A DNA stretch of 64,000 bases from IMG/VR virus record IMGVR_UViG_3300044974_001280, positions 62,001 to 126,000 of that record. One strand, written 5' to 3'. This document shows, piece by piece, positions 6,187 to 30,791 of the stretch. Positions within the stretch are counted from its first letter, which is position 1. The number at the start of each line of letters is the position of its first letter. Below the pieces are notes generated by a model, which worked only from the letters and a program-made list of their open reading frames with translations, searched no databases and had not been told where the DNA came from. Both the position numbers and the translations under genes were made by a program.

Positions 6187-8169
6187 ATGTCTGGTTCTAC
6201 CACTCTTAATTTTACTCCTACCGCTGCCCAAACCCCGGGTAACACTCAATCTTTTTCAGCCACCCCTGGCTTTGTCAGACCTTATCCCTTTGGATCTGAA
6301 GAGTGGAGATATAAAAGTCTAGCTGCCGATGTTACCTCTAGATTTTCCAATCTAGGTTCGGTTGTTCCTGAGAAAGGGCCGACTGCTAGATCTCTATTTG
6401 CCCATGCAGCTAAATATGGTGCAACTTATGGCAAGTACAACCAGTTTCTTTTCTACTCTTTTAGTAACAACTCGAACGACTTCAGAGCGGAATATTACCA
6501 ATCCGAAACTGCCCAGTTCAATCCTAGAATTTCTTCCTTAGAATCTAAAAATCCTTCTGCCGGAGCTTTGGTGAAGGCAACTCAGCAGTTTATTTTTCAA
6601 AAAACACCAAACGATAAGAACGACAGCGGGCCTGCTGATAATACTGTTGCCCCTTCCCCCATCGTGGGAGGAGTAGCGGCTCCTTATTTTTGGAGTGATT
6701 TTCTGTATTGTAAATACTACGGAACCATTCCCAACAACTACATGATCACTCTTCGCAGATATCCTGCTCCTATGCGGGACAATCTGGATATTCCCAGTCA
6801 ATTAAAAGAATCTTCAATGTATGAAAAAGGAGTAGGAAGGCCCGTTGCCCAGGCGGTAACCTGGTGGGGTGGACAGACTGGAAACTCTTTAAATTCTATT
6901 ATTTCATTTTCTACAGGTTTAAATTGGGATTCAAAAACACAAGAAGAGATCTCAGACAACAAAGGATTCGATCAAGGTTTCTTCAAAACTGTGGTTGGAA
7001 GAGCTTTGGGCTCAGTTGCCGAGGGGGTAGCTGGAGATTTAGGACTTAATCTAGTGTCGGGGTTGGGCGATCTTTTAAACGTCATAGCCGCTTCTTCAGA
7101 GGGAGGAAATCAGCAGATAACTATGGCGAAAATTAACGCAGGCCTAAGAGATAAGTTTACGTCTGCCAATGGTCCTTTATCCGATTTTATTTTTACCCCT
7201 GTTGATACGGTCGATAAGACTTATTTCAGGGACAGGGGCTTGTCTTTTTCTGGCGGAGAGTATGGAGGAATTACCCTGAAATTTCACTATGAGCTTACCT
7301 CCCTCGGTCAAGTCAATACAAAAGCAGCGATGGTAGATATAATCGGCAACCTGCTGGCTTTGGGTACCAATTATGGAAATTTTTTGACCCCTGATGTCAG
7401 ATACGACAACACCTTCCCCGCCATTGGGTTTCCGGGAGGTGATGAAGGTTTAAGAAACTTTTATTCGGATCCTTTAAATTGGACTAAAACGGCTCTGAAA
7501 TATTTAGCGGATCCCAATGGAACTACCATGTCGGATCCCGAAAACCCTCTGGTTCAGCAATTTAAAAATTTTTCTAATCAGTTAGAGGGACAAGTGCAGC
7601 AATTGGCTTCCGCTTTGACCCAAACTTCCGGTGGAAATACGTTAGAAAATTTAAAGAAACAAGTAGACGGGCCTTTGGGTAATGTGCTGGCTTTTGCCTT
7701 GTCCGAAGACTTAATCGAAAAGATTCAGGTTCCTCTATCTCTTAAAACAGGTGCTCCTGTCGGAGAGTGGCATTTGGTAGTGGGTAATCCTATGAATCCT
7801 ATCGCCATGATAGGAAACCTCATTTGTTCTAACGTGACCATAGATTTTGGTGAAGTTTTAGGTCCTGATGATTTTCCAACCGAAATTACTGCTACCTTTG
7901 AACTTGACCACGGAAGAGATCGAGATAGGGGAGAAATTGAATCTATGTTCAACAGAGGGGACGGGAGATTGTATCAATCAACCCTGCCCACATACGCCAG
8001 TACTCAGTCTCTGGCCAGTCAGTCTAATGTTCTGGGTGAAAACATTCCTGTTTCCAATACGGATCCAACCCAGGCAAATCCCTTCCAATTAGTTTCTGGA
8101 ACCAATAGTGGGGGCCAACAAAATCCTGCTACTTTCAATGTTATCCCCCCAGTTTTACAGCCTCGTTAA
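6187..8169 (+). CDS. virion structural protein, probable baseplate/tail-tube junction (gp48/gp54-like)
   Basis: 660 aa; position immediately before gp53, hub and spike; C-terminal GNLICSNVTIDFG..LGPDDFPTEITATFEL resembles the tube-fold ending of gp48-type proteins. Confidence 0.45.
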   Translation: MSGSTTLNFTPTAAQTPGNTQSFSATPGFVRPYPFGSEEWRYKSLAADVTSRFSNLGSVVPEKGPTARSLFAHAAKYGATYGKYNQFLFYSFSNNSNDFRAEYYQSETAQFNPRISSLESKNPSAGALVKATQQFIFQKTPNDKNDSGPADNTVAPSPIVGGVAAPYFWSDFLYCKYYGTIPNNYMITLRRYPAPMRDNLDIPSQLKESSMYEKGVGRPVAQAVTWWGGQTGNSLNSIISFSTGLNWDSKTQEEISDNKGFDQGFFKTVVGRALGSVAEGVAGDLGLNLVSGLGDLLNVIAASSEGGNQQITMAKINAGLRDKFTSANGPLSDFIFTPVDTVDKTYFRDRGLSFSGGEYGGITLKFHYELTSLGQVNTKAAMVDIIGNLLALGTNYGNFLTPDVRYDNTFPAIGFPGGDEGLRNFYSDPLNWTKTALKYLADPNGTTMSDPENPLVQQFKNFSNQLEGQVQQLASALTQTSGGNTLENLKKQVDGPLGNVLAFALSEDLIEKIQVPLSLKTGAPVGEWHLVVGNPMNPIAMIGNLICSNVTIDFGEVLGPDDFPTEITATFELDHGRDRDRGEIESMFNRGDGRLYQSTLPTYASTQSLASQSNVLGENIPVSNTDPTQANPFQLVSGTNSGGQQNPATFNVIPPVLQPR

Positions 8170-8194
8170 TAAAAAAATGAACTCATAAAAACAG

Positions 8195-8782
8195 ATGTTA
8201 AATATAGATACTCTTGAAAGAAATAAAAGTATTTTCAATCCCAATAAAGATCTGCAAAATAACGGGATAGGAATTTGGGATCTAACCTCAAGTTCTATGG
8301 ATTTCACCAACATCAATTTGAAGTTGGAAAGATACTACACTTTGAGGGAAGAGTATCAAATGAGACCTGATCTATTGGCCTTGCAGGCCTACGGAAATTT
8401 AGCTTACACTGGTTCTTTGATGAAGGTTAATTTCATTTCGAATCCTTTTGCCATGCAGGAGGGCGATTTAATCGTGGTGCCGGTTGTAGATCAGATTGAA
8501 GCGACTTTTAATCTGAAACAAGCCACAATTCTCAAAGGCAACACTTCGGATAACCCCAACCAAAATTTCAGAGATGCTCAAGAACAAAAAAAATTCAGAA
8601 TTTCTAATTCCAGACAGCAGTTTTTAGAAAAAAGAAATGTCCCCAAGAATCCTCCAGCCCAGATTTTACCATCTAACATAGCCCAGGCTGAAGAAAGGCA
8701 GACAGTGAGAACCAATGTTGTGATTGGCTTAGCTCCTGACGTCAGCAATTCTTTGCCCAATCCTGCTGGTAATCCGAATTAG
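8195..8782 (+). CDS. baseplate wedge protein gp53-like (LysM-like)
   Basis: MRPDLLALQAYG....LMKVNFISNPFAMQEGDLIVVP is the gp53/LysM-like RPDxxAxxxYG...N.I.NP signature. Confidence 0.75.
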   Translation: MLNIDTLERNKSIFNPNKDLQNNGIGIWDLTSSSMDFTNINLKLERYYTLREEYQMRPDLLALQAYGNLAYTGSLMKVNFISNPFAMQEGDLIVVPVVDQIEATFNLKQATILKGNTSDNPNQNFRDAQEQKKFRISNSRQQFLEKRNVPKNPPAQILPSNIAQAEERQTVRTNVVIGLAPDVSNSLPNPAGNPN

Positions 8783-12793: not shown

Positions 12794-13462
12794 ATGGCAA
12801 ACCCCCGACTTTATTTAGGCCAGATAGTAGATATTGACGACCCTAGAAAATCTGGTCGAGCCCGAATCAGGGTTTTTGGATTATTTGATGGCTTGGAGCA
12901 TGAAGATATACCCTGGGCAAGTCAGATAAGCGGGGTTTCTTTTGGCAGGGGAGGAGCTGGAACCATCTCCATCCCAAAATTGGGATCTATAGTGGTAGTT
13001 CAGTTCGATGGTCAAAATTATTACAAGATGAATTACTACGGGGAGAAGGACTATGCCCAAGACATGCTGGACGAGATAGCAGATTCCTACGAGGGAGCAC
13101 AGGTCATCATGTATGACACCGAGGCTGAGCCTGGATCTTTAACCCTATTTTACACCAAAAAGAAAGGAGCTGTTTTCTCTTTGGGTGATGCCAAAATTCA
13201 ATTTGATACTCAGGATGGGGGCCAGCTTAGAGTAATTATCGAAATGGGTGGAGATCAAATTAGAATGGAGAATAACAAGGTGATCGTCAACTCCAATAAT
13301 ATTGAGCTGGGTGAAGCTGCGGCTCAGGCTCTCATTAAAGGTAACACTTTCCAAGCCTACTTTAATTCACACACCCATATTGGCAATCTGGGCGCTCCAA
13401 CTTCTCCTCCCGTAGTACCTTCTACTCCAGATCATCTATCCACAGTTTCTAAAACAAGATAA
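12794..13462 (+). CDS. baseplate central spike, gp5 N-terminal OB-fold / P2 gpV-like
   Basis: YLGQIVDIDDPRKSGRARIRVFG...IPWA...IPKLGSIVVVQF (gp5 OB fold); C-terminal FNSHTH (HxH apex motif). Confidence 0.85.
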   Translation: MANPRLYLGQIVDIDDPRKSGRARIRVFGLFDGLEHEDIPWASQISGVSFGRGGAGTISIPKLGSIVVVQFDGQNYYKMNYYGEKDYAQDMLDEIADSYEGAQVIMYDTEAEPGSLTLFYTKKKGAVFSLGDAKIQFDTQDGGQLRVIIEMGGDQIRMENNKVIVNSNNIELGEAAAQALIKGNTFQAYFNSHTHIGNLGAPTSPPVVPSTPDHLSTVSKTR

Positions 13463-13464
13463 AA

Positions 13465-16131
13465 ATGTCAGCTCTTCCAGATAGGATTTTATCTCCAGAG
13501 CAAGTTCAGCAGATCGTCGAAAAATCGCTGGAGACCTTCTCGAAAATAACAGGTCAAGATAACTTGAAAAGTTCTTCTCCTCAATTTTTAGGAATTGGGG
13601 TTTTGGTTTTTTTAGAAATTAAAACTTTTGAAAGAACCCTGGCCCTATTATTGTCTCCTCTGATTCTGGGCAATAAAATAGTTTCAGAAGCTTTAACCTT
13701 AGCTAGACCTCTTAGATTTATCAGAGAAAATTTGGGTCAAGTTCAAGAGATAATACAAAATCCGATTCAATTTGTCCTAGATGAAGGTATCAACGATAAT
13801 TTGAAAGATTTTCCCTTTCCGTTATATCTGTGGTGGAAAAAATCAGGTTCCCCTAACATCGAACTTTTAAATGGATTGATAGAAGAAAACTCAGAGCCCT
13901 CCGCATTACCAGAGAGTGAATTCAATTACACTTTGATAACAGGGGATTTTGAAAACCCAGCTCCTGGGTTTATAACTTCGTCGGATCCCGACCCTGCTAA
14001 TCTAACCTCGGTCAAGATCAGTTCTACTAGTATAAATCCAGATGAAAATCCACCTTTGAGTTTTCTACAGCCTGGGGACATCATTTCAATCGATGCTATA
14101 GGTTTTCAAACGGCCTATTCTGTCTCTGCCATCGAAGAACAACCCGGCTATTCTCTCTTGCTCCTGCAGAGGGTTGCCTCAAACTCTCAAGATCTTCCGG
14201 CCACAGACAGAACTGTTTATTCCCCCAATACTCAAAGCTCCTCGATTCGGATCAATCGCAGAATTTCTTTTCGTAGATTTTTAACACCCGAAGGCACCAT
14301 TATTGTTCCTTTCAGTGAACTTGGAATTTTGTTTCCTCTGGTCAGAGACATCTCCCTTGAGATTGGAAATTTCGATAAACTGTCTCCGGACAACCCTTCC
14401 CGTCTTTTGATCGATTTTTTTGAAACCAGAAGTGGTTTAGATTTCAATAAGGTACTTCTAGATATGTCCAAGGGAATTTACCCGGAGATAGATTTGGAGG
14501 CTTTACAGAATGGAGACGAGCTTGAATTTTATAAACAGCAACTCGTCTCTGTGGTTAAATTAGTGGATCTAGGCATTCAGAATCCTTTTTTCTTGGTCAA
14601 AATCATTCTAAATTATTTTGTACTTCTTGCGTTACCTTTCAAGGCCTTAGTTGGAGCCATGTCCCTAGTTGGGCAGAAAATTTTGAACCCTGTTGCTCTT
14701 ATTCAATTTGTCTTCGAAAATTTGGCCGACCCTGGAAAATTTTTCTGCAAAATTCTAGGTCAGTCTTTTATTGATTTTCTTCAGCCCTTGATCGAGCCAC
14801 AGATTCCTGCTGATATCGGGTGGAAAAATTTAGTTCAAGACCCCAATGATTCCAACAAAGGTTTTCTACCTCTTTTTACTGATCTGGTGTGTGGTGACTA
14901 TCAGAGAAAATTATCTCAATATCAGCCCAATGAAGCTTTTTTTGCCCAACAGGGAGCTACGCCAACGTCTCCTGAACCCAATCCAAGTATTCAATTGGAT
15001 TACACCAAGACCGATGATTTTATTCCTTCGGCTGGAGAAATTTCATACGGGGCTTCATCCTTAGCTGAAGTTACGACTTTCAGGGTCAGTACTTCCACTT
15101 CAAACGTGGATTCAAGTACTGCATATTTGCTTTCCTTAAAACCAGGGGATCAATTTTATCTGTCCACTTCGGAGGGTTTCCAGTATTATAGGCTGCAAAA
15201 TAGAACTCTGGTCTCCGGGGAGCAAGCAACTTTCTTTGAACTGAACGTTACCCCAATTTCAGAATCTGTTGTTCTGGAACAAAGATTAGCGGGTTTTAGA
15301 AGCACTGTCGCTCCAACGGGGATAAGTTCAGAACTTCAGGCTTCTTTAAACATCGATAACCCGGATCGAGAATTTTTGTTTATTATAGAAAATTATCTTC
15401 CGCCTAGAGCTATTTTTATCTGGGATGGGATTAAAGGAGTCCTAAGTTTGGCCATAGGGCTGGCAAATACCTCTCCGGCCTTAATCCGAACCATCCTGTC
15501 TGAACTTATCAAATCATCAGGATCTGAACAAATCTCTAGTCCTACGAACGTTTCTGCTTCTCTGGTTGCCTCTTTGATCAACACCAATAGGTTGAATGAT
15601 AGAGGGAATTATGAATCGAACGAGGACCGAGATGCGGCCCGAGAATTTCTTTATGAGTTAGTCGTCCAGAATGGTCCTGACGTTGGTGGATTCATCCAAA
15701 GGTATTTTTCTGATTTGCAACAGTCCAGAACAGAGGAGGGTTTACCAACTGTTGTTTATAAATCCGAGTTAACTCCACCTCAGGCCAATGAACTTTTAAA
15801 GTCCACGTATTCTCTGTCTCAATTGGGAGAACACATCGAGGTTTTGACCCGAATTCTGTATGAATTAACTCCCTATGATAGACCTGGAGATCTCATTCCT
15901 AAATCAACTCCTTTACCGACTGTTTATGCTGTATCTGACCAGGGACTGAGGTATGTTCTGGCAGAAGGGAGTCTTTGGAGAGCCTTTGAAATCTGGAATT
16001 TACTGACAGCAGGAGTGCTTGATCAAACAGAGAACAGAGTTCAGGTGGGCGCTTTCAGACAAGCCGTCCTAAATAATCTGAAATTTATCAATGAAGTTCT
16101 GCTGCCCAAGATTTTTGAAGTTGAGAGTTAA
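13465..16131 (+). CDS. large hypothetical protein with internal duplication and hydrophobic helices
   Basis: 888 aa directly after the spike gene; two helical+beta units (LSFLQPGDII / LLSLKPGDQF). Confidence 0.6.
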   Translation: MSALPDRILSPEQVQQIVEKSLETFSKITGQDNLKSSSPQFLGIGVLVFLEIKTFERTLALLLSPLILGNKIVSEALTLARPLRFIRENLGQVQEIIQNPIQFVLDEGINDNLKDFPFPLYLWWKKSGSPNIELLNGLIEENSEPSALPESEFNYTLITGDFENPAPGFITSSDPDPANLTSVKISSTSINPDENPPLSFLQPGDIISIDAIGFQTAYSVSAIEEQPGYSLLLLQRVASNSQDLPATDRTVYSPNTQSSSIRINRRISFRRFLTPEGTIIVPFSELGILFPLVRDISLEIGNFDKLSPDNPSRLLIDFFETRSGLDFNKVLLDMSKGIYPEIDLEALQNGDELEFYKQQLVSVVKLVDLGIQNPFFLVKIILNYFVLLALPFKALVGAMSLVGQKILNPVALIQFVFENLADPGKFFCKILGQSFIDFLQPLIEPQIPADIGWKNLVQDPNDSNKGFLPLFTDLVCGDYQRKLSQYQPNEAFFAQQGATPTSPEPNPSIQLDYTKTDDFIPSAGEISYGASSLAEVTTFRVSTSTSNVDSSTAYLLSLKPGDQFYLSTSEGFQYYRLQNRTLVSGEQATFFELNVTPISESVVLEQRLAGFRSTVAPTGISSELQASLNIDNPDREFLFIIENYLPPRAIFIWDGIKGVLSLAIGLANTSPALIRTILSELIKSSGSEQISSPTNVSASLVASLINTNRLNDRGNYESNEDRDAAREFLYELVVQNGPDVGGFIQRYFSDLQQSRTEEGLPTVVYKSELTPPQANELLKSTYSLSQLGEHIEVLTRILYELTPYDRPGDLIPKSTPLPTVYAVSDQGLRYVLAEGSLWRAFEIWNLLTAGVLDQTENRVQVGAFRQAVLNNLKFINEVLLPKIFEVES

Positions 16132-16142
16132 TTTTCATTGAG

Positions 16143-16150
16143 GATATATA
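16143..16150 (+). promoter_or_regulatory. putative late promoter GATATATA
   Basis: Motif 26 nt upstream of the S1-like gene. Confidence 0.55.
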
Positions 16151-16175
16151 GAGCGTCATTTTAAACTCTTATCTA

Positions 16176-17339
16176 ATGAATTCTATTTTCGAACTCAAAA
16201 AAATCGAAGTTCCATTTTTTGACTGGTCCATTCCCAATAAATTCAAGGTGAACCAGAAATTAAAAACACACAAAGACTGTAAGGTCTATTGTCATGCCCC
16301 TTATGCCGAAGAGCTTTATCGACACATGATGGGTTCTGTCTCGGGGGTCAATGCAGGAAAAGACCTCGTCCCTGGCAATCTTTACGAATGCCGTGTTTTC
16401 TTAGTAACTGAAACCCACGCCTTGGCTCAGACCAGGGCAGGTCAAACCGTGTATATCGATCTTAAGAAGGAGGACAAAGATGCCCACAGATTGGGTATCT
16501 CGGGTATTGATTTTACCGTGGGTACCGACATTCAAGCCACCGTACGTCAAATTGGCCCCTCTTACTACGGCTCTGTGGTAGAAAGCTACATCCAAGGTCT
16601 CAAGGCAGAGTTTTTCGATCAAATCAAGAAAGAGAGTATTGCCTACGAGGCCAAAGTTGAATCTGTCAATAAAGGAGGTTACATCGTTGATGTAAACGGT
16701 ATTAAGTGTTTTCTGCCTGGGTCTTTAGCTGCTGCTAACAAGATCACCGACTTCGATGCCTACATCGGAAAAACTTTTCACGTCATGATCGATGGCTATG
16801 TTCAAGAAAAGGACATATTTGTTGTTTCTTACAAAAAATACATTCAAAAGATCATGGATCAAAAGATCCAAGAACTAGATCTGATGAAAAAATATAAGGG
16901 GCACGTCACTGGTACTTCGGCCTTTGGAGTCTTTGTTGAGTGGGAAGAAATCTACACGGGATTGATTCATAAAACAGAATTCGAGAATCAGATTGTGATA
17001 GGGTTTAAACCAGGAGACGAGATAGAGTTTTACATCAAAGAAATCAAGGATGACAATAAGGTTACCTTGACTTTTGGAGAACCTATTGAAAAAACCAAAA
17101 AAGTTTACGAGCTCAAAAAGAATGTTGACGAGGGAGTGGCCGAAGTTATCACCGCCTTGGTCAAATACCGCAGAAAGAACGGAGCCTTGATAGAATTAGT
17201 ACAAGAAGGTTTATTGGCTATGATTCCTCAGGACAAACTGGGAAAAGAGAGCAAAAACATGAAGACCGGAGATGAAATTCAAGTTAAGGTTTATGCCGTT
17301 GATCCTGTGATGAATAAAATTTACGCCATGCCAGCCTAA
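16176..17339 (+). CDS. rpsA: ribosomal protein bS1-like multi-S1-domain protein
   Basis: EAKVESVNKGGYIVDVNGIKCFLPGSL...VVSYKK (bS1 domain-2 type), KGHVTGTSAFGVFVE...TGLIHKTEF (domain-3 type) and further OB repeats (GDEIQVKVYAVD); about 4 S1 domains in 387 aa. Confidence 0.8.
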   Translation: MNSIFELKKIEVPFFDWSIPNKFKVNQKLKTHKDCKVYCHAPYAEELYRHMMGSVSGVNAGKDLVPGNLYECRVFLVTETHALAQTRAGQTVYIDLKKEDKDAHRLGISGIDFTVGTDIQATVRQIGPSYYGSVVESYIQGLKAEFFDQIKKESIAYEAKVESVNKGGYIVDVNGIKCFLPGSLAAANKITDFDAYIGKTFHVMIDGYVQEKDIFVVSYKKYIQKIMDQKIQELDLMKKYKGHVTGTSAFGVFVEWEEIYTGLIHKTEFENQIVIGFKPGDEIEFYIKEIKDDNKVTLTFGEPIEKTKKVYELKKNVDEGVAEVITALVKYRRKNGALIELVQEGLLAMIPQDKLGKESKNMKTGDEIQVKVYAVDPVMNKIYAMPA

Positions 17340-18730
17340 TGAATTCGCACTTCCAGAAGGCCCAGGCTCTAACCTCGGTCGTTTTAGGTTTTGAATTTGA
17401 GTTTTACTCCGAGATGACTCGGGGAAGAATAGTTGAATCACTGTCGAAGGAGCTGGGCAAAAAAGTTCAGCTCTCTTCTAAATATCATTCTAAAATACCG
17501 GTTACTTCCTCGAGTTTTAAATTGGAACCCGATTATTCAGGAGGTAATAACATGAACGAATTGATCACAGGTCCCTTGCCCTATTCAGAAGCTATTCCCA
17601 TTTTAATCAAGACCCTCAGATGGATAGACGCCCATGGCTGGACCACAGATAAATGTGCCTTTCAGTTCTCTATCAGTTTTGACCCTCGAAACAGAGCCCT
17701 GGAAAAAATTGAAAAACTAGATAGACTGAAATTCATCCTGGGGATTGATGAGGGAGTCATCTATTCTCAATTCGGCAATCGGACTGGCAATGTTTATGCC
17801 AAATCAATCAAAAAAATCGTGCCCAGAAATAGGTTTTCTATTTTAGAGAACATTTCTAGCATAGATCCCAAACTCTTTAAAACCCCCGATGAAAAATATT
17901 ACGGAGCTAATTTTTCCAAACTGCCCAAAGGCTACTTGGAAATCAGATATCTAGGAGGCACGGACTACGAAAAGAAAATCCCGGCCATCCGAGAAGTTGT
18001 CGATTACGTGTCACTATTTCTCCATGACATCTTGTCTGGCAAAAGAGGATACACTCGTCAGGATCTGGAAAAACTCCAGGAGATGATGAGACAACACACA
18101 AAGGTGGTCAAAAGCTTTTCTAATCCAGATTCTTTCTTCTCCAATTTTCCGGATTTTCACGTCCTGATCGATCTCAAGGGCTACGAGGAAAACGTTAAAA
18201 CCTACTGGTCCCACATCAGAGAGAAGATTTTTGATCTCATCGTAGAAGGAGGAGTGACCTCTTGTTTCTTTAATTACGACACCTCCATCGGTCGATTTCA
18301 GATTAAGGATGCCAAGAGCAGGAATGGATTGATTATCAAAGATCTGGACATCTTCGACTCCTCCTTTAAAAATGCGAAACTTGAAAATTGCAAAATTTAC
18401 AGCTGTCAAATCAAGGACGCAGAGCTGCATAACTGCGAGTTGATGACCAGCTCTAAGATCAAAGATTCTAAATTTCAGAATTCTATTGCCAACTACGGCA
18501 ACCTCTTGGAGGATTGCTACATCGACTGTCCCGGTCAAAACATCGACTGCCAGATCAAAGGAGGTATTCTCAGAAATGGTGATCTGGGCAGAAATGCTCT
18601 GGTGAGTGAGCAGACCCAGAAGGTGAAGGATTTCAACGACATCAGAAATAATCGCTTTATTACCGATTCCAGGCTCAAAAATCTGAACGATCCGGTGAAG
18701 AAAATCAGATTCAAAAATATCAACTACTGA
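17339..18730 (+). CDS. putative amidoligase (COOH-NH2 ligase / Amidoligase_2-like) with C-terminal pentapeptide-like repeats
   Basis: LGFEFEF, FKLEPDYS, ELITGPL, KYYGANF, YLEIRYLGG follow the amidoligase motif order; tail NAKLENCKIYSCQIKDAELHNCEL has 5-residue periodicity; TAATG overlap with the S1 gene. Confidence 0.6.
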   Translation: MNSHFQKAQALTSVVLGFEFEFYSEMTRGRIVESLSKELGKKVQLSSKYHSKIPVTSSSFKLEPDYSGGNNMNELITGPLPYSEAIPILIKTLRWIDAHGWTTDKCAFQFSISFDPRNRALEKIEKLDRLKFILGIDEGVIYSQFGNRTGNVYAKSIKKIVPRNRFSILENISSIDPKLFKTPDEKYYGANFSKLPKGYLEIRYLGGTDYEKKIPAIREVVDYVSLFLHDILSGKRGYTRQDLEKLQEMMRQHTKVVKSFSNPDSFFSNFPDFHVLIDLKGYEENVKTYWSHIREKIFDLIVEGGVTSCFFNYDTSIGRFQIKDAKSRNGLIIKDLDIFDSSFKNAKLENCKIYSCQIKDAELHNCELMTSSKIKDSKFQNSIANYGNLLEDCYIDCPGQNIDCQIKGGILRNGDLGRNALVSEQTQKVKDFNDIRNNRFITDSRLKNLNDPVKKIRFKNINY

Positions 18731-18731
18731 C

Positions 18732-19514
18732 ATGACTCTAGAAGAACTAATTCAGGAAATCAAGGACGATTTATCGGTCAGTTGCTCTCTGCCCTACAAC
18801 CTTAACGACCAGGAGATTCAAAGGATTATCAGAAGAGCCAAAGCTTGGATGTATGATAATTACCAGTATGCGGTGGAGAAAAGGTACTTCGTGCTCGGGG
18901 GAGCTTTCTTTCAAACTCCCCAGTTTAGAAACACTAGACAGGTTCAGTTGCCTGATAAAATAGTGACAGTTTTTGACGTCAGAGAAACCAACGGCAACGG
19001 TATCTCAGGCAATCCAGATAAAGATTTCGGGGATTCTAAATTGATTGGCTCCGAGTTGCTGCTGTCCCCCTTTACTGGGGACAATCTGGTCTACAGAACT
19101 GTCATGTATTCTTATTTTGACTTGGCTCGGGCTTATCTATTACCGACTTACGCCTTTAACTGGAATAAGAACACCAAGAAATTGACAATTTTAGGCAGGG
19201 ACCCGGTCAGGGGAAATAATAGTTCTTCACCCCAGAGTAACGCCGGCTATAACCTGACTCAGGCGGTAGTGGTAAGCTGCTTCGTGGCCATCGAAGACTA
19301 CGAACTTTTTTCCGACGAACTATTTATCAGATATTGCCGAGCCCAAGCCAAAAATTCTCTGGTCAAACTTCTGAGCGCCTTTGACTATAACCTGCCGGGG
19401 GGAGTTAGAGTTAACACTCAAGCTCTGTCTGCTGAAGCTCAAGCAGAGATGACTGAGGTGATGGCAATGATAAATGGGGAAAATTCGACGAGTTATTTTT
19501 TGCAATGGAGTTAA
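18732..19514 (+). CDS. neck protein gp13-like
   Basis: LNDQEIQRIIRRA.....Y...E and FIRYCRAQAK......FDYNLPGGVRVN...L..EA match the T4 gp13 family (LPGG motif). Confidence 0.75.
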   Translation: MTLEELIQEIKDDLSVSCSLPYNLNDQEIQRIIRRAKAWMYDNYQYAVEKRYFVLGGAFFQTPQFRNTRQVQLPDKIVTVFDVRETNGNGISGNPDKDFGDSKLIGSELLLSPFTGDNLVYRTVMYSYFDLARAYLLPTYAFNWNKNTKKLTILGRDPVRGNNSSSPQSNAGYNLTQAVVVSCFVAIEDYELFSDELFIRYCRAQAKNSLVKLLSAFDYNLPGGVRVNTQALSAEAQAEMTEVMAMINGENSTSYFLQWS

Positions 19515-19624
19515 CTTATTAATAGGTATTTAACATATATGTCAATCGAGTTTTGGATCTATGACGAAAAGGGCAACAAATCTGTGAAATAGAACACATC
19601 CTTTTTTCCTCCTAATTCAATCGG

Positions 19625-19632
19625 GATATATA
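19625..19632 (+). promoter_or_regulatory. putative late promoter GATATATA
   Basis: Motif 17 nt upstream of gp25 ATG. Confidence 0.55.
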
Positions 19633-19648
19633 AGGGGAATTCTTCCCC

Positions 19649-20020
19649 ATGATAGAAATTTACAACAGAGATCCCGAAGACCCTAACTACAAGTCAGATG
19701 TTCTGGAAATTACAGATCCGATTGAGATCTGTATTGGTCAGCTAAAAATGATGCTGCTGACCAACAAGGGAGAGGTGCTAGGAGATCCTTCTTTTGGATT
19801 GGGCTTGGAAGAATTGGTCTTCACAATGGGTCTTTCTCAGAAGACCTTGACCGATGAAATAGATCGGCACATCCGTAATTACGTGCCCCTTTTCAACCAG
19901 TTGGGGGGATATTTTACCGTTGATTTTTACCTGGGGACTGCAAGAGACATAGTTTTTCTGAATTTTTTCATTCCCAGTTATGGTGGCAAGAGTCCATTGG
20001 TAACTCTAAAAGTAACTTAA
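19649..20020 (+). CDS. baseplate wedge subunit gp25-like
   Basis: QLKMMLLTNKGEVLGDPSFGLGLEELVF is the gp25/GPW signature. Confidence 0.85.
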   Translation: MIEIYNRDPEDPNYKSDVLEITDPIEICIGQLKMMLLTNKGEVLGDPSFGLGLEELVFTMGLSQKTLTDEIDRHIRNYVPLFNQLGGYFTVDFYLGTARDIVFLNFFIPSYGGKSPLVTLKVT

Positions 20021-20027
20021 AACAAAA

Positions 20028-21758
20028 ATGGCAAGCAATATATTTCAGAAGAACAATATTCTTATTCGGGGTCTGTTAAACGACACGTACAATTTTCTCC
20101 AGTTGACCTACAGTCAAACCCGAAACGTTTTCACGGTTGCCTCTGCCTGGGGTCAAATCCTTTTCGTGTTAGAAAACATCTCCCAACTGATCCTGTACTT
20201 TATCGAGGACTCTATCACCGAGTTGAACATCTATCAGGCAACGAGGGATTATTCCGTCAAAAGTTTGGCCCGGATAGCAGGATACGATCCGGCTAGAGGT
20301 ATGGCAGCACAGGGAGAAGTAGCTGTTTCCTGGAATCTAAAAGGGACTGATGTGGGAGGAGCGGCAGTTCTTTTATCAGGTCGTCCTAGAATCCAGTGTG
20401 AGCAGAACGGACAGATCTACACCCTGATCCTCAATGGGCCTTCAGTCAAGGTTCCCCTGTCTAGAGGTTCTACTTTTGCCTTTAAAATTGTCCAGGGTTC
20501 CTTTATCACCAACACTTTCACGGGAACCGGAGCCGCCCTGCAAAGTTACAATATCTATTCTAAATCGGGCACTTTAATCGACCAGTTTTACGTGGACGTT
20601 TTTGTCAACGATGTGCCCTGGAAGAAATATTTCTCTCTGTACGATATTCCTTTAAATGGCAGGGGATTTCTTTGTCGGTCTGGCATCACCGAGGGGATAG
20701 ACATTTACTTCGGGAACGGCAACTTCGGGCAGCCTCCTTTAAGGGGTAGTTTGATTCGGGTCGAATTTTTGCAAACCTCTGGTTTTACCGGCAATATTAA
20801 ATCGAGACGAGATCTGCAATTGACTTATAGATTTTTGGACTCTGGAACGGATCTCTTCGGGAGAGAAGTTAATCTGAATGATTATCTGACCATAGCAGGA
20901 GTTATCGATCCCTCTTTCGGTTCTGATCCAGAACCGGTGGCTTTAACTCGCCTGGTAGCTCCTAAAACCTCGAGAGCTTTCGTGTTTGCCAATGCAGAAA
21001 ATTACGAGATCTACCTGCAAAGATTCAACCTCTTTTCCCAAATTCAGGCTTTCAGCACCTTCGGAGATCAGTTTTTGGACGATGACAATGTGGTGTACCT
21101 TTTTCTGATCCCGAATGTGACTGTGGATTTGCTACTGGGACAAGACTATTTCGATGTGCCTGCCGAAAATTTTGTGCTGAGTCAATCCCAAAAACTAAGG
21201 ATTCTCAATTTACTGGAGGACTCGGGTCAAATGCTGGCCACAACTGTTGTGAAGATTCTGGATCCTCAAATTCAAAACTTTGTTGGCAACCTGATTTTAT
21301 CGATCTTTGAGGGTTATGATCCAGAGATCATTCAGGACAAATGTAGAACTGCTATCTCGGAATACTTCTTGAATCTGAAGAGAAGAGACAGAATTCCCAA
21401 ATCTGACATTATTGCCATTGTGGAAGGGATTGAAGGGGTTGACTCTGTTTCTTTCTACTTCGTAGGGCAGGCCAACGAGGAGTACCATGCCTCGGTTGAT
21501 AATTTACCAAATGTTTCCACTGCCCAATTAAATCGGTTAATAGGTCTAGATGTTTATGGAGACATTATTATCAATTCAGGAGAACTGATCCTGATGAGGG
21601 GTGGGTGGACAGATCGCTACGGCACGACTTATGAGGTTGGCATTGTTCCGGGTAAGCCCTCTGCCCTGAATATAAACATCTCCTCGATCAATCCTAGAAA
21701 TTTATCAAATCAGCTCAATTCAGAAGAGAGAGCTAGAATTATAGCCCAAAATAGATAA
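20028..21758 (+). CDS. baseplate wedge subunit gp6-like
   Basis: ATRDYSVKSLARIAGYDP, IYFGNGNFGQPP..GS.I.V.FL.TSG..GN, GSDPE....R..AP; follows gp25. Confidence 0.85.
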   Translation: MASNIFQKNNILIRGLLNDTYNFLQLTYSQTRNVFTVASAWGQILFVLENISQLILYFIEDSITELNIYQATRDYSVKSLARIAGYDPARGMAAQGEVAVSWNLKGTDVGGAAVLLSGRPRIQCEQNGQIYTLILNGPSVKVPLSRGSTFAFKIVQGSFITNTFTGTGAALQSYNIYSKSGTLIDQFYVDVFVNDVPWKKYFSLYDIPLNGRGFLCRSGITEGIDIYFGNGNFGQPPLRGSLIRVEFLQTSGFTGNIKSRRDLQLTYRFLDSGTDLFGREVNLNDYLTIAGVIDPSFGSDPEPVALTRLVAPKTSRAFVFANAENYEIYLQRFNLFSQIQAFSTFGDQFLDDDNVVYLFLIPNVTVDLLLGQDYFDVPAENFVLSQSQKLRILNLLEDSGQMLATTVVKILDPQIQNFVGNLILSIFEGYDPEIIQDKCRTAISEYFLNLKRRDRIPKSDIIAIVEGIEGVDSVSFYFVGQANEEYHASVDNLPNVSTAQLNRLIGLDVYGDIIINSGELILMRGGWTDRYGTTYEVGIVPGKPSALNINISSINPRNLSNQLNSEERARIIAQNR

Positions 21759-29300: not shown

Positions 29301-30056
29301 AGATCTATCTCAGGAACTTATGTTGATGAATTTTCCACTGTTTCTTTGGATAGTTCAACGGTCCAATCTCCTCTTGTTTTTTCAGTCTATCCAAATTTAG
29401 ATCTGTTCCTAGCAGGTTCCGTAACAGGTCAAACCGGACCAACTGGACTTCCATATCCCCCTCTGGATGGATTTCCTTTTGTTTCTTTTTCTGAGAGCTA
29501 TAAGGCACCCAAAGGGATAGATCTAGGTAACATTATTTCTAGAGCTGGGTCCGGAGCTTGGACCTGGGCCGATGTTCATAATTCAGAGAGAGATTTATAC
29601 GTGCCCATGCTTTCCACTGTTTTCTTTTCAAACTACGGATCCCAAATTTTCGGAAAACAAAATAACAGATGGGTGCTGACCGACGCCAGAAATGGGAATG
29701 TTATTCTGGATGTTAAATTCACCCCTTATTTTATTTACACCTTTACCTCCTCGGGCTACTACAGTTTACAAAACACTGTTGAAGATGCTGCCGGCAACAT
29801 TTACGAAATTTCAAAACCTGCTTTCATCAAGGTTGTAAACCAATCAATTCCTAGAGCCGATGACCCTAACCCTTTGCTGGTAAATTCCGCCGACTATGGA
29901 TACATTAAACCCTCCAAAGAATTACAAAACCAGATTTGGGAACTCAATCAGGATCTTCTAGAAGAACAGATAGTTATCAGAAGAGAAAGCGCCATTCCTT
30001 TTGGCTCGGGACTGGTCATTAAAAGTGATGCTAATTCAACTTTTAGGGAAACCTAA
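26388..30056 (+). CDS. tail/baseplate-associated beta-propeller protein (Reg_prop-like blades, C-terminal PKD-like)
   Basis: YFNSSNSVVPDN, VYSISFDENGNYWLGTDSGLTYWDG, FNTGNSALPSDRV are two-component-regulator-propeller-type blades; YTFTSSGYYSLQNTVEDAAGN is PKD-like. Confidence 0.6.
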   Translation: MAFYILEAATDSAENIWAVGRDLSLFNGQDWEYFNSSNSVVPDNSPYYLDTRTISIDEYDVKWVGCAIAPSTSQVLVFSVANTDAATGSNWTLSDFNLPPGGLWEVGEIYASPYGDEVLAYITGLNGGAGTGATCTPGITGGYLWRYNKVLQEWSEVAPGYIWPTIYEIAAKGLDGVNWEYYLATSDGLQIIPPGTLDYEVLQDGTFFLPGLKKLNPYNSSVPTSQVYSISFDENGNYWLGTDSGLTYWDGKKFYNWTVPLNNSVTKVTSRPYGHVFFRCGDPFFDLSLSDGFFHFNGDSFSQFNTGNSALPSDRVVDLLLVHNKVEKNGLSVYPNDLWVVNGNNVTLFDYNLPHVYASSNYTGTTGWNFLYYTPGSTGATTDAANLPKTQRYDWVYPSWQGYDNQKIVLNHPGMDPRSLFLTTNFKDLANGQAENQNYWNWGSVPTYDQSLTAGRIPSSDWVVGITGSSSPFLTQPSISLTATTRYSHLNVVGGFMIGENAYLGASSNTEDFVLQNTNDTSFFPGNEFMGFLSFYTDGGQVQGAIPFRGANTKILDVKRSFDGKTVYALGIYNYFLEAGKFTWGSSYPTAGGMSVTGVTGPTGGPIGFSNMASPGATSDYSYPWILNAPTSATSGLYIPDFSVVNDTTAFFIAEIDYEIGNQISYGGIDFSSETASEVFCLKKFRYFPGASSDYDTQTGGPTGYFPSGVNYPGTASLAVGENSIRIMGNIQGGFATLARDYENILDAPSCPSFFFSSISGGSYTNSSFVLELNEDFSLRGVQTIGMTGPNSYTDTISTVPNAQTFLLSGTSTSDVSYGNLNLTHPNPGFCFPWILLSLPSFTGITGSFISNHTSNGSSFPSWRPTIGTFSSDSSYYAGFIYTGNAITTSGSTSLTFEGASGALSVGLLSISPGGIVRQESSYEILPSSYQAVDSSFLSGVQGLSTGDSYYLSVFYPTVPGVTGGGNHIFKRSISGTYVDEFSTVSLDSSTVQSPLVFSVYPNLDLFLAGSVTGQTGPTGLPYPPLDGFPFVSFSESYKAPKGIDLGNIISRAGSGAWTWADVHNSERDLYVPMLSTVFFSNYGSQIFGKQNNRWVLTDARNGNVILDVKFTPYFIYTFTSSGYYSLQNTVEDAAGNIYEISKPAFIKVVNQSIPRADDPNPLLVNSADYGYIKPSKELQNQIWELNQDLLEEQIVIRRESAIPFGSGLVIKSDANSTFRET

Positions 30057-30757
30057 AATTTTCCTTTGTTACTTCCGGTTCCTCCAGTTCCCCGGTACTT
30101 CCATTCCTCGTATCTTTTGACGATTTCTTTTAGAATTTTACTTCTGACGATGTCATCATCTGTAAAGACGAATTCTCCTACCCCCTCTACATCTCTTACC
30201 ATATCTACGAACATGGGCAAAGCAACTTTCTCGTATGAGATGTCGTGCTGAGTTACGTCCCCTGCTAGTAGAACTTTAGAATCGTTGCCCAGTCTAGAAA
30301 CATAAAGCATGAGTTGCTTCATATCACAATTTTGAGCCTCATCCAGAATCATCATGGATTTATCAAAGGTTGCTCCCCTGAGATAGGCTAGAGGTCTAAA
30401 TTCAATCTGCTTTTCAATGAAAAGCTGAGCTAATTTTTCTTTGGAAATGATTTTTTCCATGGTGATCAGAAAACTTTCCATGTAGGGACCTATTTTATCG
30501 TTGACGTCTCCTGGTAAAGAACCTAGTTTTTCCCCTGATTCCTGGATCGGCTTAGTGAAAATAATTCTTTCAATCTCAGATTTCTGTAAAAGCTTCAAGG
30601 CTGTGTAACAGGCAGAAAATGTTTTAGAAGTTCCTGCAGGTCCCCAACAAAAGGTTATGGTGTTGTGGATGATGGTGTCAGAGTAGAGTTTTTGCTTAGG
30701 AGAAAGAGAAATATCTCTAAAATCTTTGTTAACGAGTTTTGATTTTCCGATGGGCAT
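30053..30757 (-). CDS. phoH: PhoH-like ATPase
   Basis: GPAGTSKT Walker A, EKLGSLPGD, PLAYLRGATF, ILDEAQN, SRLG, GDVTQHD. Confidence 0.95.
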   Translation of the reverse strand: MPIGKSKLVNKDFRDISLSPKQKLYSDTIIHNTITFCWGPAGTSKTFSACYTALKLLQKSEIERIIFTKPIQESGEKLGSLPGDVNDKIGPYMESFLITMEKIISKEKLAQLFIEKQIEFRPLAYLRGATFDKSMMILDEAQNCDMKQLMLYVSRLGNDSKVLLAGDVTQHDISYEKVALPMFVDMVRDVEGVGEFVFTDDDIVRSKILKEIVKRYEEWKYRGTGGTGSNKGKF

Positions 30758-30779: not shown

Positions 30780-30791
30780 GGATATATATCC
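30780..30791. promoter_or_regulatory. palindromic GGATATATATCC, putative bidirectional promoter
   Basis: 12-bp perfect palindrome carrying GATATATA on both strands, midway between divergent starts 30757 (-) and 30817 (+). Confidence 0.55.

What the first reader, a model, noticed from the sequence alone, without database searches (positions are those of the whole stretch)
16143..17339. Phage-encoded ribosomal protein bS1 homologue inside the baseplate cluster under a late-type promoter
Seen: about 4 S1 domains (host bS1 usually has 6) with a novel N-terminal extension, heading a tightly coupled S1 - amidoligase - gp13 operon. Established: bS1 recruits mRNAs through A/U-rich leaders, and some huge phages encode bS1. 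Inference: late-expressed phage S1 replaces or supplements host S1 to bias ribosomes towards the short A-rich late leaders needed for massive structural protein synthesis.
Basis: partly seen in the sequence, partly recalled or inferred. Interest (0 to 1): 0.65.

Follow-up and report, generated by a model that had tools for sequence, protein, structure and literature searches.

The report
Phage-encoded short ribosomal protein S1
A large lake-water phage that probably infects Bacteroidota carries a shortened, four-domain copy of ribosomal protein bS1 that keeps the host-type parts used to dock on the small ribosomal subunit and sits in a conserved late baseplate/neck operon; it is a well-supported example of a kind of gene already reported in huge phages.

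Summary
Window 16176-17339 (+) encodes a 387-aa protein with four S1/OB domains. A GATATATA promoter-like motif precedes it at 16143, and its stop overlaps the start of an amidoligase gene, which is followed by a T4 gp13-like gene, all inside a baseplate cluster.

The protein is a shortened bS1, not a full equivalent (77.8 bits against a 577-bit rpsA cut-off). D2 matches host d2, D3 is a generic central RNA-binding repeat, D4 matches host d6, and D1 is divergent.

The "novel N-terminal extension" is not novel. Its invariant F-x-W motif matches the N-terminal helix of Bacteroidia bS1 (FLANFNWHNF in Flavobacterium johnsoniae), which contacts uS8 in a cryo-EM structure. The helix that follows, plus D1, is modelled onto uS2 at the canonical bS1 site (ipSAE 0.79; best control 0.00).

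The gene, promoter motif and gene overlap are kept in 14 relatives. The family has 945 detectable members on contigs up to 400 kb.

Docking on host 30S in late infection is therefore plausible, but only modelled. The proposed bias towards late leaders is not supported, because putative early and late phage leaders are equally A-rich and lack Shine-Dalgarno sites. Possible rpS1 in huge phages (Al-Shayeb 2020) and late phage bS21 (Chen 2022) are published precedents.

The parts
16143..16150 (+). GATATATA promoter-like motif, 33 nt upstream of the S1 start (phage-specific, probably middle/late promoter element)
   Evidence: RATATATA occurs 13 times against 3.47 expected in the window. Genome-wide it lies within 90 nt upstream of 39 of 183 genes in 0-190 kb and 0 of 70 genes in 190-224.5 kb. 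It precedes portal gp20, prohead protease and neck-like genes. It is conserved 32-51 nt upstream of S1 in 12 of 14 relatives.
16151..16175 (+). Short A/T-rich leader without a Shine-Dalgarno sequence
   Evidence: Sequence read. Genome-wide, SD words are at or below background, with A at 44-60% and G at 8-11% between -19 and -3.
16176..17339 (+). Gene for the 387-aa shortened bS1 homologue (P0001), stop codon included
16212..16241 (+). Residues 13-22: F-x-W motif (PFFDWSIPNK; F15 and W17 invariant), matching the uS8-contacting N-terminal helix of Bacteroidia-type bS1
   Evidence: Invariant columns. Host F[D/N]W lies 139-140 aa upstream of FLPGS in 15 of 16 Bacteroidia-type bS1. hhalign scores 22.6 against shuffles of 10.0 +/- 2.4, with 0 of 120 reaching it. 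F. johnsoniae FLANFNWHNF contacts uS8 (PMC13000457).
16242..16298 (+). Residues 23-41: phage-family segment (VNxKIKT...KVYCH). It is longer than the host loop, and residues 31-39 are modelled as a strand against uS2.
   Evidence: Alignment; shared with Lak phage homologues; interface residues listed.
16299..16340 (+). Residues 42-55: helix (Y43 and A44 invariant, L47 nearly so) modelled on the Phe32-equivalent of uS2. It is the counterpart of the bS1 N-terminal uS2-binding helix.
   Evidence: Helix 42-55. Contacts of L47/Y48 with uS2 residue 34, mapped to E. coli Phe32. Weak profile match to the host pre-d1 helix (4 of 200 shuffles reach the score).
16371..16580 (+). D1 (residues 66-135): divergent OB/S1 fold. 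Its loop 2 (A88-T91, with G89 and Q90 invariant) is modelled at the uS2 Zn-pocket residues.
   Evidence: Fold. No specific match to any host domain. Interface.
16635..16838 (+). D2 (residues 154-221): orthologue-like copy of bS1 domain 2 (KGGYxVDxxGIKCFLPGS)
   Evidence: hhalign D2 to d2 scores 62.4, probability 97.6%. PDB and NCBIfam alignments place it on bS1 d2.
16881..17078 (+). D3 (residues 236-301): canonical RNA-binding S1 repeat (FGVFVEW...GLIHKTEF; F250, F253 and H265 invariant), of the central d3-d5 type
   Evidence: Best Pfam S1 stretch at 239-298. hhalign scores best to d5 (50.8), then d4 (37.1). Invariant residues.
17136..17336 (+). D4 (residues 321-387): S1/OB domain most like host bS1 domain 6
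   Evidence: hhalign D4 to d6 scores 43.0, probability 92.9%. Fold.
17339..18730 (+). Translationally coupled downstream gene: viral Amidoligase_2 family protein with C-terminal pentapeptide repeats (463 aa)
   Evidence: Pfam match. Exclusively viral named clusters. Overlap with the S1 stop is conserved at -1, -8 or -11 nt in relatives (with gene calls).
18732..19514 (+). T4 gp13-like neck/head-tail adaptor gene, last gene of the unit
   Evidence: PHROG 211 at E 5.9e-10. Orthologues carry PF26809 Phage_T4_gp13.
12794..13462 (+). Upstream baseplate hub OB-domain protein (gp5/V type); context
   Evidence: PHROG 430 at E 1.6e-15; PF04717.
13465..16131 (+). Variable 888-aa gene between the hub and S1 (290-888 aa and 27-35% identical in relatives); context
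19625..20020 (+). Next GATATATA motif (19625-19632) and gp25-like baseplate wedge gene (19649-20020), marking the start of the next transcription unit

Best explanation
The gene encodes a shortened, phage-adapted copy of the host's ribosomal protein bS1, derived from a Bacteroidia-type bS1.

It keeps the two N-terminal elements that anchor Bacteroidia bS1 to the 30S subunit. These are the aromatic F-x-W helix, which contacts uS8, and the following helix plus first OB domain, which sit on uS2. It also keeps the characteristic second domain. The four RNA-binding domains d3-d6 are reduced to two: one central-type repeat and a d6-like domain.

It is transcribed from a phage-specific RATATATA promoter, together with an amidoligase and a neck protein, inside the baseplate cluster. 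That places it with the virion genes, probably late in infection.

The most likely mechanism is that it occupies the bS1 site on host 30S subunits, replacing or supplementing host bS1. This would sustain or re-tune initiation on Shine-Dalgarno-less, A-rich messages during mass production of virion proteins.

Shown here: homology, domain make-up, conservation of the anchor motifs, operon structure and conservation.
Modelled only: uS2 docking.
Inferred: the uS8 contact, late timing, and any effect on which messages are translated.
For: Homology:
- Pfam S1 at E 2.7e-15.
- Best structural match is ribosome-bound bS1, 9gut_B, at E 1.6e-20.
- Co-linear profile alignment: phage 32-383 to host-type bS1 20-367 of 594, probability 97.4%.
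- D2 matches d2 at 97.6% and D4 matches d6 at 92.9%.

Anchor 1 (uS8 helix):
- F15 and W17 are invariant in 38 family members.
- F[D/N]W lies 139-140 aa upstream of the d2 FLPGS motif in 15 of 16 Bacteroidia-type bS1.
- hhalign scores 22.6 against shuffles of 10.0 +/- 2.4, with 0 of 120 reaching it.
- The same helix, FLANFNWHNF, contacts uS8 in the F. johnsoniae 30S cryo-EM structure, where the bS1 N-terminus is stably associated with uS2 and uS8 (PMC13000457).

Anchor 2 (uS2 site):
- Complex model of residues 1-145 with a Saprospirales-order uS2 gives ipSAE 0.79, 0.78 and 0.79, against a best control of 0.00. That mark was reached by 58 of 80 solved complexes and 2 of 110 mismatched pairs. The runs agree in at least 92% of contacts, and partner pLDDT is at least 78.
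- 7 of the 9 uS2 residues known to touch bS1 in E. coli (PMC10123108) fall in the predicted interface, which covers 34 of 253 residues.

RNA binding: canonical S1 residues F250, F253 and H265 are invariant.

Context:
- There is no Shine-Dalgarno usage, and leaders are A-rich.
- The promoter motif precedes portal, protease, neck and baseplate genes and is absent from 190-224.5 kb.
- Operon, promoter and gene overlap are conserved in 14 relatives and on 332-399 kb contigs.
- The family has 945 detectable members.
- Short metatranscriptome contigs lie on S1 and on the S1/amidoligase junction.

Host: one family member is binned with a Saprospirales MAG.
Against: - It is far below the rpsA equivalog cut-off: 77.8 against 577 bits. 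The putative host-lineage bS1 scores 516-542 bits.
- D1 has no specific sequence similarity to host d1.
- The uS2 model may reflect memory of solved bS1-uS2 complexes, and it shows likeness, not binding.
- By hand count, family-invariant residues are not clearly enriched at the modelled interface: 9 of 35 against a 21% baseline.
- The F-x-W segment is low-confidence in the monomer model, and its uS8 contact was not modelled.
- Early-region and late-region phage leaders have the same composition, so a preference for late messages has no visible basis.
- The RNA evidence is low-depth contigs, and DNA carry-over is not excluded.
- Placement in a virion-gene operon fits other roles as well.
Confidence: 0.55

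Rival explanations
1. Competitive blocker or specificity switch. The protein docks at the bS1 site through the conserved anchors. Because it has only two RNA-binding-type domains instead of four, it displaces host bS1 and lowers translation of host messages that need full bS1 unwinding. Unstructured A-rich phage messages would still be read. This would be host shut-off, not stimulation.
For: Both anchors are retained while two of the central repeats are lost. From established knowledge, N-terminal fragments of E. coli S1 compete with the full protein for the ribosome; this was not tested here. The first 106 residues are sufficient for 30S contact (PMC10123108).
Against: There is no measurement of any effect on translation. 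In E. coli the first three or four domains are reported to retain S1 activity on the 30S (established knowledge, not tested here), so a four-domain protein need not be defective. Late expression is an odd time for shut-off.
Confidence: 0.15
2. Off-ribosome RNA-binding protein. The S1 repeats would act as an RNA chaperone, an mRNA protector or a translational or processing regulator of late transcripts, without stable incorporation into 30S.
For: S1 domains are common in non-ribosomal RNA-binding proteins, and both Mizuno 2019 and Al-Shayeb 2020 warn about this. The protein scores far below the rpsA cut-off. D1 is divergent. Four-domain S1 homologues exist that are not classical ribosomal S1: the match to the 391-position PRK06676 model is co-linear over residues 152-381.
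Against: This does not explain strict conservation of the Bacteroidia-specific F-x-W anchor, or of the helix that maps onto the uS2 site. It also does not explain the specifically d2-like domain, which in bS1 is not a general RNA-binding module (PMC10123108).
Confidence: 0.15
3. Virion-delivered factor. The protein is made late with baseplate and neck proteins, packaged into or attached to the particle, and released into the next host cell. It would act on ribosomes at the very start of infection.
For: It has a fixed position inside a structural operon, between the hub and the neck protein, in every relative examined. It sits behind the same promoter motif as virion genes. The first 12 residues are variable and acidic.
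Against: There is no direct evidence and no virion proteome for this clade. A phage bS21 gene also sits among structural genes and is simply expressed late (PMC9723584). Genes in structural modules are not necessarily virion components.
Confidence: 0.08
4. Purely structural OB-fold protein of the baseplate or neck that descends from S1 but no longer deals with RNA or ribosomes.
For: Baseplate context; OB folds are common in hub proteins.
Against: Canonical RNA-binding residues and both ribosome-anchor motifs are invariant. The best structural matches are ribosome-bound bS1. No PHROG structural family matches.
Confidence: 0.04

Closest known systems
Bacteroidia-type ribosomal protein bS1 (e.g. 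Flavobacterium johnsoniae bS1; Saprospirales-order bS1 found here, L016 and L074-L078)
   Same: Tandem S1 domains in co-linear order. Both have an N-terminal F-[D/N]-W helix (the uS8 contact), a second helix and first OB domain at the uS2 site, and a d2 signature (GGxxVxxxGxxxFLPGS). Both work in an SD-less, A-rich initiation context.
   Different: 387 aa with 4 domains, against about 580-600 aa with 6. Two of the central RNA-binding repeats are missing. D1 is divergent. There are about 24 extra residues between the F-x-W motif and d2. It scores 77.8 bits on the rpsA model against 516-626 for the bacterial proteins. It is encoded by a phage inside a baseplate operon.
'Possible rpS1' of huge phages (Al-Shayeb et al. 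2020, PMC7162821), including the Lak megaphage and LR7565xx homologues
   Same: Same kind of gene in the same kind of phage: huge, Bacteroidota-linked and lacking Shine-Dalgarno sites. Direct homologues at 25-36% identity are found in Lak and LR7565xx genomes. Lak copies share the whole N-terminal module.
   Different: That paper left open whether these are true rpS1. It did not describe the anchors, the domain make-up or the structural-operon position. The present family is a distinct, tightly conserved freshwater group (55-74% identity).
Phage-encoded bS21 of freshwater Bacteroidetes phages (Chen et al. 2022, PMC9723584)
   Same: A ribosomal protein of the initiation region, encoded among structural genes and highly expressed late. 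Hosts include Saprospiria. The same hypothesis of substitution into host ribosomes was proposed there.
   Different: It is a different ribosomal protein. No bS21 was found in this 230 kb record. In F. johnsoniae bS21 stabilises the bS1 N-terminus (PMC13000457), so the two phage strategies may target the same corner of the 30S.
Four-domain S1 homologues of Firmicutes type (NCBIfam PRK06676)
   Same: Similar length (about 390 aa) and four S1 domains. The match is co-linear over residues 152-381.
   Different: The score is far below that model's cut-off (75.4 against 368 bits). The phage protein has the Bacteroidia-type N-terminal anchors.
bS1 of jumbo cyanophage PhiMa05 (PMC13157829)
   Same: A phage-encoded bS1 annotated in a cultured jumbo phage.
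   Different: There it is part of a set of six ribosomal protein genes of recent cellular origin, next to bL21 and bL27, not inside a baseplate operon.

Membership tests
Ribosomal protein bS1 (rpsA) | Several tandem S1 (OB-fold) domains | tested here: met
   Pfam PF00575 at E 2.7e-15 with 3 stretches. Four OB folds in the model. Top fold matches are bS1 chains.
Ribosomal protein bS1 (rpsA) | Full-length equivalence: six domains in Gram-negative-type bS1, and a score above the curated rpsA cut-off | tested here: not met
   TIGR00717 scores 77.8 bits against a cut-off of 577. All other rpsA models are also far below cut-off. It has four domains instead of six.
Ribosomal protein bS1 (rpsA) | bS1-specific second domain (d2/OB2) next to the anchor domain | tested here: met
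   hhalign D2 to d2 scores 62.4, probability 97.6%, and no other host domain scores above 14.5. It aligns to E. coli residues 112-177.
Ribosomal protein bS1 (rpsA) | N-terminal helix plus first OB domain that bind uS2 | tested here: inconclusive
   The model supports it: ipSAE 0.79 against 0.00 for the best control, a mark reached by 58 of 80 solved complexes and 2 of 110 mismatched pairs. 7 of 9 known uS2 contact residues are recovered. But D1 has no specific sequence match to d1, and a model does not demonstrate binding.
Ribosomal protein bS1 (rpsA) | Bacteroidia-type N-terminal aromatic helix (F-N/D-W) that contacts uS8 | tested here: met
   This holds at sequence level only. F15 and W17 are invariant. 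The motif is shared with 15 of 16 Bacteroidia-type bS1 at fixed spacing. hhalign scores 22.6 with 0 of 120 shuffles reaching it. The structural role comes from PMC13000457. The contact itself was not modelled.
Ribosomal protein bS1 (rpsA) | Physical presence on the 30S subunit and a role in mRNA recruitment | not testable with these tools
   This needs co-sedimentation, pull-down or cryo-EM, and translation assays.
Phage-encoded ribosomal protein homologues (Mizuno 2019; Al-Shayeb 2020) | Encoded on a bona fide phage genome, not on cellular contamination | tested here: met
   The source is a 230 kb IMG/VR virus record. It carries T4-like portal, prohead protease, sheath-like, hub, gp25, gp6 and gp13 genes. 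The same operon occurs on 14 viral contigs.
Phage-encoded ribosomal protein homologues (Mizuno 2019; Al-Shayeb 2020) | Conserved as a gene under constraint, not a decaying fragment | tested here: met
   945 homologues were found. The top 120 are all 345-403 aa, most of them 383-397. Mean column identity is 67%, with long invariant stretches.
T4-type late promoter control | A conserved short A/T-rich element upstream of late (virion) genes, and expression late in infection | tested here: inconclusive
   The motif is enriched, correctly placed and conserved. It also precedes RimK-like and ClpB-like genes. Timing and the factor that reads the motif are unknown.

The most novel reading that the evidence does not exclude
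This phage clade may remodel the corner of the host 30S subunit that selects SD-less messages, and do so in more than one way.

First, a shortened bS1 would plug into the uS2/uS8 site.

Second, it may be chemically modified, or accompanied, by the amidoligase that is translationally coupled to it. The same genome also carries a RimK-like ATP-grasp ligase behind the same promoter motif, and RimK is the enzyme family that extends ribosomal protein bS6.

Third, the S1 homologue may be carried in the virion with the baseplate and neck proteins, so that it acts on ribosomes as soon as the next cell is infected.
Probability: 0.1. Interest if true: 0.85.

Novelty: new member of a known kind. Interest (0 to 1): 0.5.

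Why it matters
Whether phage-encoded ribosomal proteins really enter host ribosomes, and what they do there, is still open for bS1. The published huge-phage survey said explicitly that true rpS1 could not be told apart from other S1-domain proteins.

This analysis gives concrete, testable reasons to treat this family as a ribosome-docking bS1:
- It keeps the Bacteroidia-specific uS8 helix.
- It keeps the uS2-site helix and loop.
- It keeps the d2 domain.
- It has lost half of the RNA-binding arm.

Bacteroidia initiate translation without Shine-Dalgarno pairing, and bS1 stimulates that initiation. A purified F. johnsoniae translation system and 30S cryo-EM already exist. The idea can therefore be tested directly by adding or swapping this protein.

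The family is abundant in lakes: 945 homologues and at least 18 lake metagenome runs hold this phage. The mechanism would therefore matter for carbon turnover by Bacteroidota.

Tried and rejected
1. I first inferred that the F-D-W motif was specific to Saprospirales (6 of 6 against 0 of 30). That was wrong. Loci had been returned only for the 30 best rpsA scorers of the phylum sample. Of the 10 lower scorers, 9 carry the motif, and F. johnsoniae has it as well. It marks Bacteroidia-type bS1 in general, so it does not pin the host to one order.

2. The PDB entry 28jw/9tvu, 'Ribosomal protein S1 homologue', looked like a possible phage precedent. It is the Chlamydomonas chlororibosome protein.

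3. Simple truncation to d1-d4, as the co-linear alignment suggests, is rejected. The domain-wise scores show D4 is d6-like and D3 is a generic central repeat, so the loss is internal.

4. The profile match of the N-terminus to bS1 lacking the F-x-W motif was only weak: 12.4 against 7.9 +/- 1.8, with 4 of 200 shuffles reaching it.

5. I looked for enrichment of invariant residues at the modelled uS2 interface. By hand count, 9 of 35 are invariant against a 21% baseline, which is not convincing.

6. Megablast of 13000-20000 against phage records found no match. No PHROG family matches the S1 protein.

7. No bS21 and no tRNA genes were found in the 230 kb record, which is about 85% complete.

8. 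uS2 was not found in the incomplete Saprospirales MAG, so a uS2 from an order-level relative was used.

9. Reads: only short, low-depth metatranscriptome contigs were available. No transcription start, strand or expression level could be read from them.

10. For the Lak phage locus only, ORFs were listed with TAG read as Q. This follows the published recoding of Lak phages, which is own knowledge. The Lak S1 ORF itself has no such codon and reads the same under table 11. No other code was used for the window.

Full report
**Observation**

The window lies at 62001-126000 of a 230,445-bp IMG/VR virus record that is about 85% complete. It is held by at least 18 lake-water metagenome runs.

The ORF at 16176-17339 (+) encodes 387 aa.

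Pfam finds S1 domains (PF00575, E 2.7e-15, three stretches). An AlphaFold2 model built on 38 family members (pLDDT 78) shows four OB/S1 folds, at about 69-133, 157-218, 239-299 and 324-386. They follow a disordered stretch (1-41) and a helix (42-55).

The S1 stop codon shares a base with the ATG of a 463-aa Amidoligase_2/pentapeptide protein (17339-18730). A gp13-like gene follows 1 nt later (18732-19514). Orthologues of that gene carry PF26809 Phage_T4_gp13.

A gp5/V-type hub lies upstream (12794-13462). A gp25-like gene (19649-20020) and a gp6/J-like wedge (20028-21758) lie downstream.

**What the protein is**

All sequence and fold searches point to bS1 and not to other S1-domain proteins:
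- The best NCBIfam matches are eleven rpsA models.
- The best PDB sequence matches are bS1 chains, aligned over d2-d3.
- The best fold match is ribosome-bound bS1, 9gut_B, at E 1.6e-20.

It is not an equivalog, however. It scores 77.8 bits on TIGR00717 against a cut-off of 577. Real bS1 from the putative host lineage scores 516-542 bits, and other bS1 of the phylum score up to 626.

A profile-profile alignment against 31 host-phylum bS1 is co-linear, phage 32-383 to host 20-367 of 594, with probability 97.4% and E 1e-11.

Scoring each phage domain against each host domain refines this:

| Phage domain | Best host match | Score / probability |
|---|---|---|
| D1 | none specific (best is d6) | 15.8 |
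| D2 | d2 | 62.4 / 97.6% |
| D3 | d5, then d4 and d1 (generic central repeat) | 50.8, 37.1, 34.0 |
| D4 | d6 | 43.0 / 92.9% |

The protein therefore looks like a bS1 that lost two of its central RNA-binding repeats. It does not look like one that was cut at the C-terminus. The canonical S1 RNA-binding residues of D3 (F250, F253, H265) are invariant in the family.

**The N-terminal 'extension' is the host-type ribosome anchor**

The first 12 residues vary. F15 and W17 are invariant, as are Y43 and A44; L47 is nearly invariant.

The bS1 of a Saprospirales MAG, and of five genomes of its order, all carry [D/E]-[F/Y]-D-W in their N-terminal extension. The spacing is almost fixed, 140 residues upstream of the d2 FLPGS motif.

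My first conclusion, that this was order-specific, was an artefact. Loci had been returned only for the 30 highest rpsA scorers of the phylum sample, and none of those has the motif. Nine of the ten lower scorers do have it, and two of them read FLANFNWHNF.

That string is the helix at positions 11-20 of F. johnsoniae bS1. A 2026 cryo-EM study placed it against uS8 and described the bS1 N-terminus as stably associated with uS2 and uS8 (PMC13000457).

The phage N-terminus aligns to these host N-termini at the motif with an hhalign score of 22.6. Column shuffles give 10.0 +/- 2.4, with a maximum of 20.5, and 0 of 120 reach the observed score (the six-sequence set gives a similar result). P0001 reads FDWSI, identical to four host sequences.

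Lak megaphage homologues share the whole N-terminal module (SFNW...VNKNIKTK...KVFSHESYAQELY). The module is therefore old among huge phages of Bacteroidota. The phage has about 24 more residues between the motif and d2 than the hosts do (164 against 140).

**uS2 docking test**

- The score was ipSAE 0.79, 0.78 and 0.79 in three runs. The best of three controls was 0.00.
- The mark was reached by 58 of 80 solved complexes and 2 of 110 mismatched pairs.
- The runs agree in at least 92% of contacts, and partner pLDDT is at least 78.
- The tool's own caveat applies. bS1-uS2 complexes have been solved, so a pass shows likeness and does not show that this copy binds.

I mapped the experimentally known E. 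coli contacts onto the uS2 used, by alignment. These contacts are uS2 Met6, Arg7, His18 and Phe32, the Zn-pocket residues Asp188, Asn203, Asp204 and Asp205, and Arg208 (PMC10123108). Seven of the nine fall in the predicted interface, which covers only 34 of 253 residues.

Phage L47 and Y48 sit on the Phe32 equivalent, as Phe5 and Phe9 of E. coli bS1 do. The D1 loop A88-T91 (G89 and Q90 invariant) sits at the Zn-pocket residues, where E. coli Lys43 inserts.

**Promoter and operon**

RATATATA occurs 13 times in the window against 3.47 expected. It occurs 46 times on the + strand and 11 on the - strand of the genome, mostly 10-75 nt upstream of ORF starts.

It precedes the T4-like portal, the prohead protease, a neck-like protein, a peptidoglycan-binding protein and the gp25-like gene. 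It also precedes a RimK-like ATP-grasp ligase and a ClpB-like ATPase. A topoisomerase-like gene lacks it.

It lies within 90 nt upstream of 39 of 183 genes in 0-190 kb, and of 0 of 70 genes in 190-224.5 kb. That second region is full of small genes, and a different element, TATATTTR, is commoner there (6 of 70 against 2 of 183). TATATTTR resembles the Bacteroidota -7 promoter element (own knowledge).

'Late-type' is therefore a fair label, but timing was not measured.

In 14 relatives at 55-70% S1 identity:
- The order hub, variable gene, S1, amidoligase, gp13, gp25 is kept.
- The S1 stop overlaps the amidoligase start by 1, 8 or 11 nt.
- The motif lies 32-51 nt upstream of S1 in 12. The other two have an over-extended ORF call that covers the motif (gene calls).

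The distant LR756500 genome keeps the gene order but not the motif or the overlap.

Two freshwater metatranscriptome runs hold short contigs inside S1, across the S1/amidoligase junction (17178-17425) and inside the amidoligase. This is compatible with transcription but weak.

**Translation context**

The genome does not use Shine-Dalgarno sites. SD words are at or below background, with A at 44-60% and G at 8-11% between -19 and -3. This matches Bacteroidia, where upstream adenines guide initiation and bS1 stimulates it (PMC13000457). It also matches the correlation reported for huge phages with possible rpS1 (PMC7162821).

Leaders in the motif-rich and motif-poor regions are alike, with A at 46% and 50% and G at 11% and 8%. 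Nothing in leader composition would let the protein favour late over early phage messages. A phage-versus-host difference was not tested.

**Comparison with what is known**

- Al-Shayeb et al. 2020 reported S1 genes in huge phages and cautioned that true rpS1 is hard to confirm. Homologues of this protein lie in their genomes and in Lak phages.
- Chen et al. 2022 described phage bS21 among structural genes of freshwater Bacteroidetes phages, including those of Saprospiria hosts. It is expressed late, and they proposed the same substitution hypothesis.
- Mizuno et al. 2019 showed incorporation into ribosomes for phage bS21 and bL12, but left S1 aside because the domain is promiscuous.

This finding is therefore a well-characterised new member of a known kind. 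What the analysis adds is the domain make-up, the retention of both Bacteroidia-type anchors, and the conserved late-operon setting.

**Verdict**

My best explanation is a host-derived, shortened bS1 that docks at the uS2/uS8 site of host 30S subunits during virion production (confidence 0.55).

The rivals are a competitive blocker (0.15), an off-ribosome RNA-binding role (0.15), a virion-delivered factor (0.08) and a purely structural OB protein (0.04).

Noticed in passing
G000:C1:161302-162768 (L063), outside the window: A RimK-like ATP-grasp ligase (PF08443, E 7e-33) sits behind the same RATATATA motif at -32. RimK is the enzyme family that adds glutamates to ribosomal protein bS6, which in Bacteroidia helps hide the anti-SD. 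This could be a second ribosome-directed function of the phage.
   Followed up: no
window 17339-18730: The gene coupled to S1 belongs to an exclusively viral Amidoligase_2 family with C-terminal pentapeptide repeats. Its overlap with the S1 stop is conserved across relatives. Its substrate is unknown. It could modify S1, a virion protein or a host protein.
   Followed up: partly
G000:C1:190000-224500, outside the window: This region holds about 70 small genes (median 125 aa) with no RATATATA motif. It has a different upstream element, TATATTTR (e.g. 'cgtatatttataccataaataaaaa'), which resembles the Bacteroidota -7 promoter. It is probably the early region, read by host polymerase.
   Followed up: partly
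window 13465-16131: The gene between the hub and S1 is the only variable member of the cluster. It is 888 aa here and 290-492 aa on L010 and L012, with only 27-35% identity in close relatives whose neighbours are 60-90% identical. It may be a fast-evolving spike or host-recognition protein.
   Followed up: no
window 37591-48927: A giant 3778-aa ORF lies in a stretch with strongly negative GC skew (-0.34 to -0.18). Parts of it match a 1331-aa ORF next to the S1 homologue of LR745206.
   Followed up: no
L003 (LR745206.1) 7608-8699: The S1 homologue of this 635 kb phage matches only from residue 152 onwards. Its N-terminus is different and more host-like (…KEYDDLCKLYESTM…), without the F-x-W motif. 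This suggests separate acquisitions or N-terminal swaps among huge-phage S1 genes.
   Followed up: no
G000:C1:166327-168792 (L064, minus strand), outside the window: A ClpB-like double AAA+ ATPase (AAA_2 at E 8e-59, plus ClpB_D2-small) sits behind the RATATATA motif at -29.
   Followed up: no
L014 (CALAZP010000190.1) and G001: A 64 kb contig with the same S1 operon is binned into an 'uncultured Saprospirales bacterium' MAG. This is a weak host hint from binning only. The MAG's own bS1 (L016) is a separate six-domain gene scoring 523.7 bits.
   Followed up: partly
window 30781-30790: The motif is palindromic here (GATATATATC) and lies between divergent genes (30053-30757 on the - strand and 30817-31713 on the + strand). 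It may therefore serve both strands.
   Followed up: no
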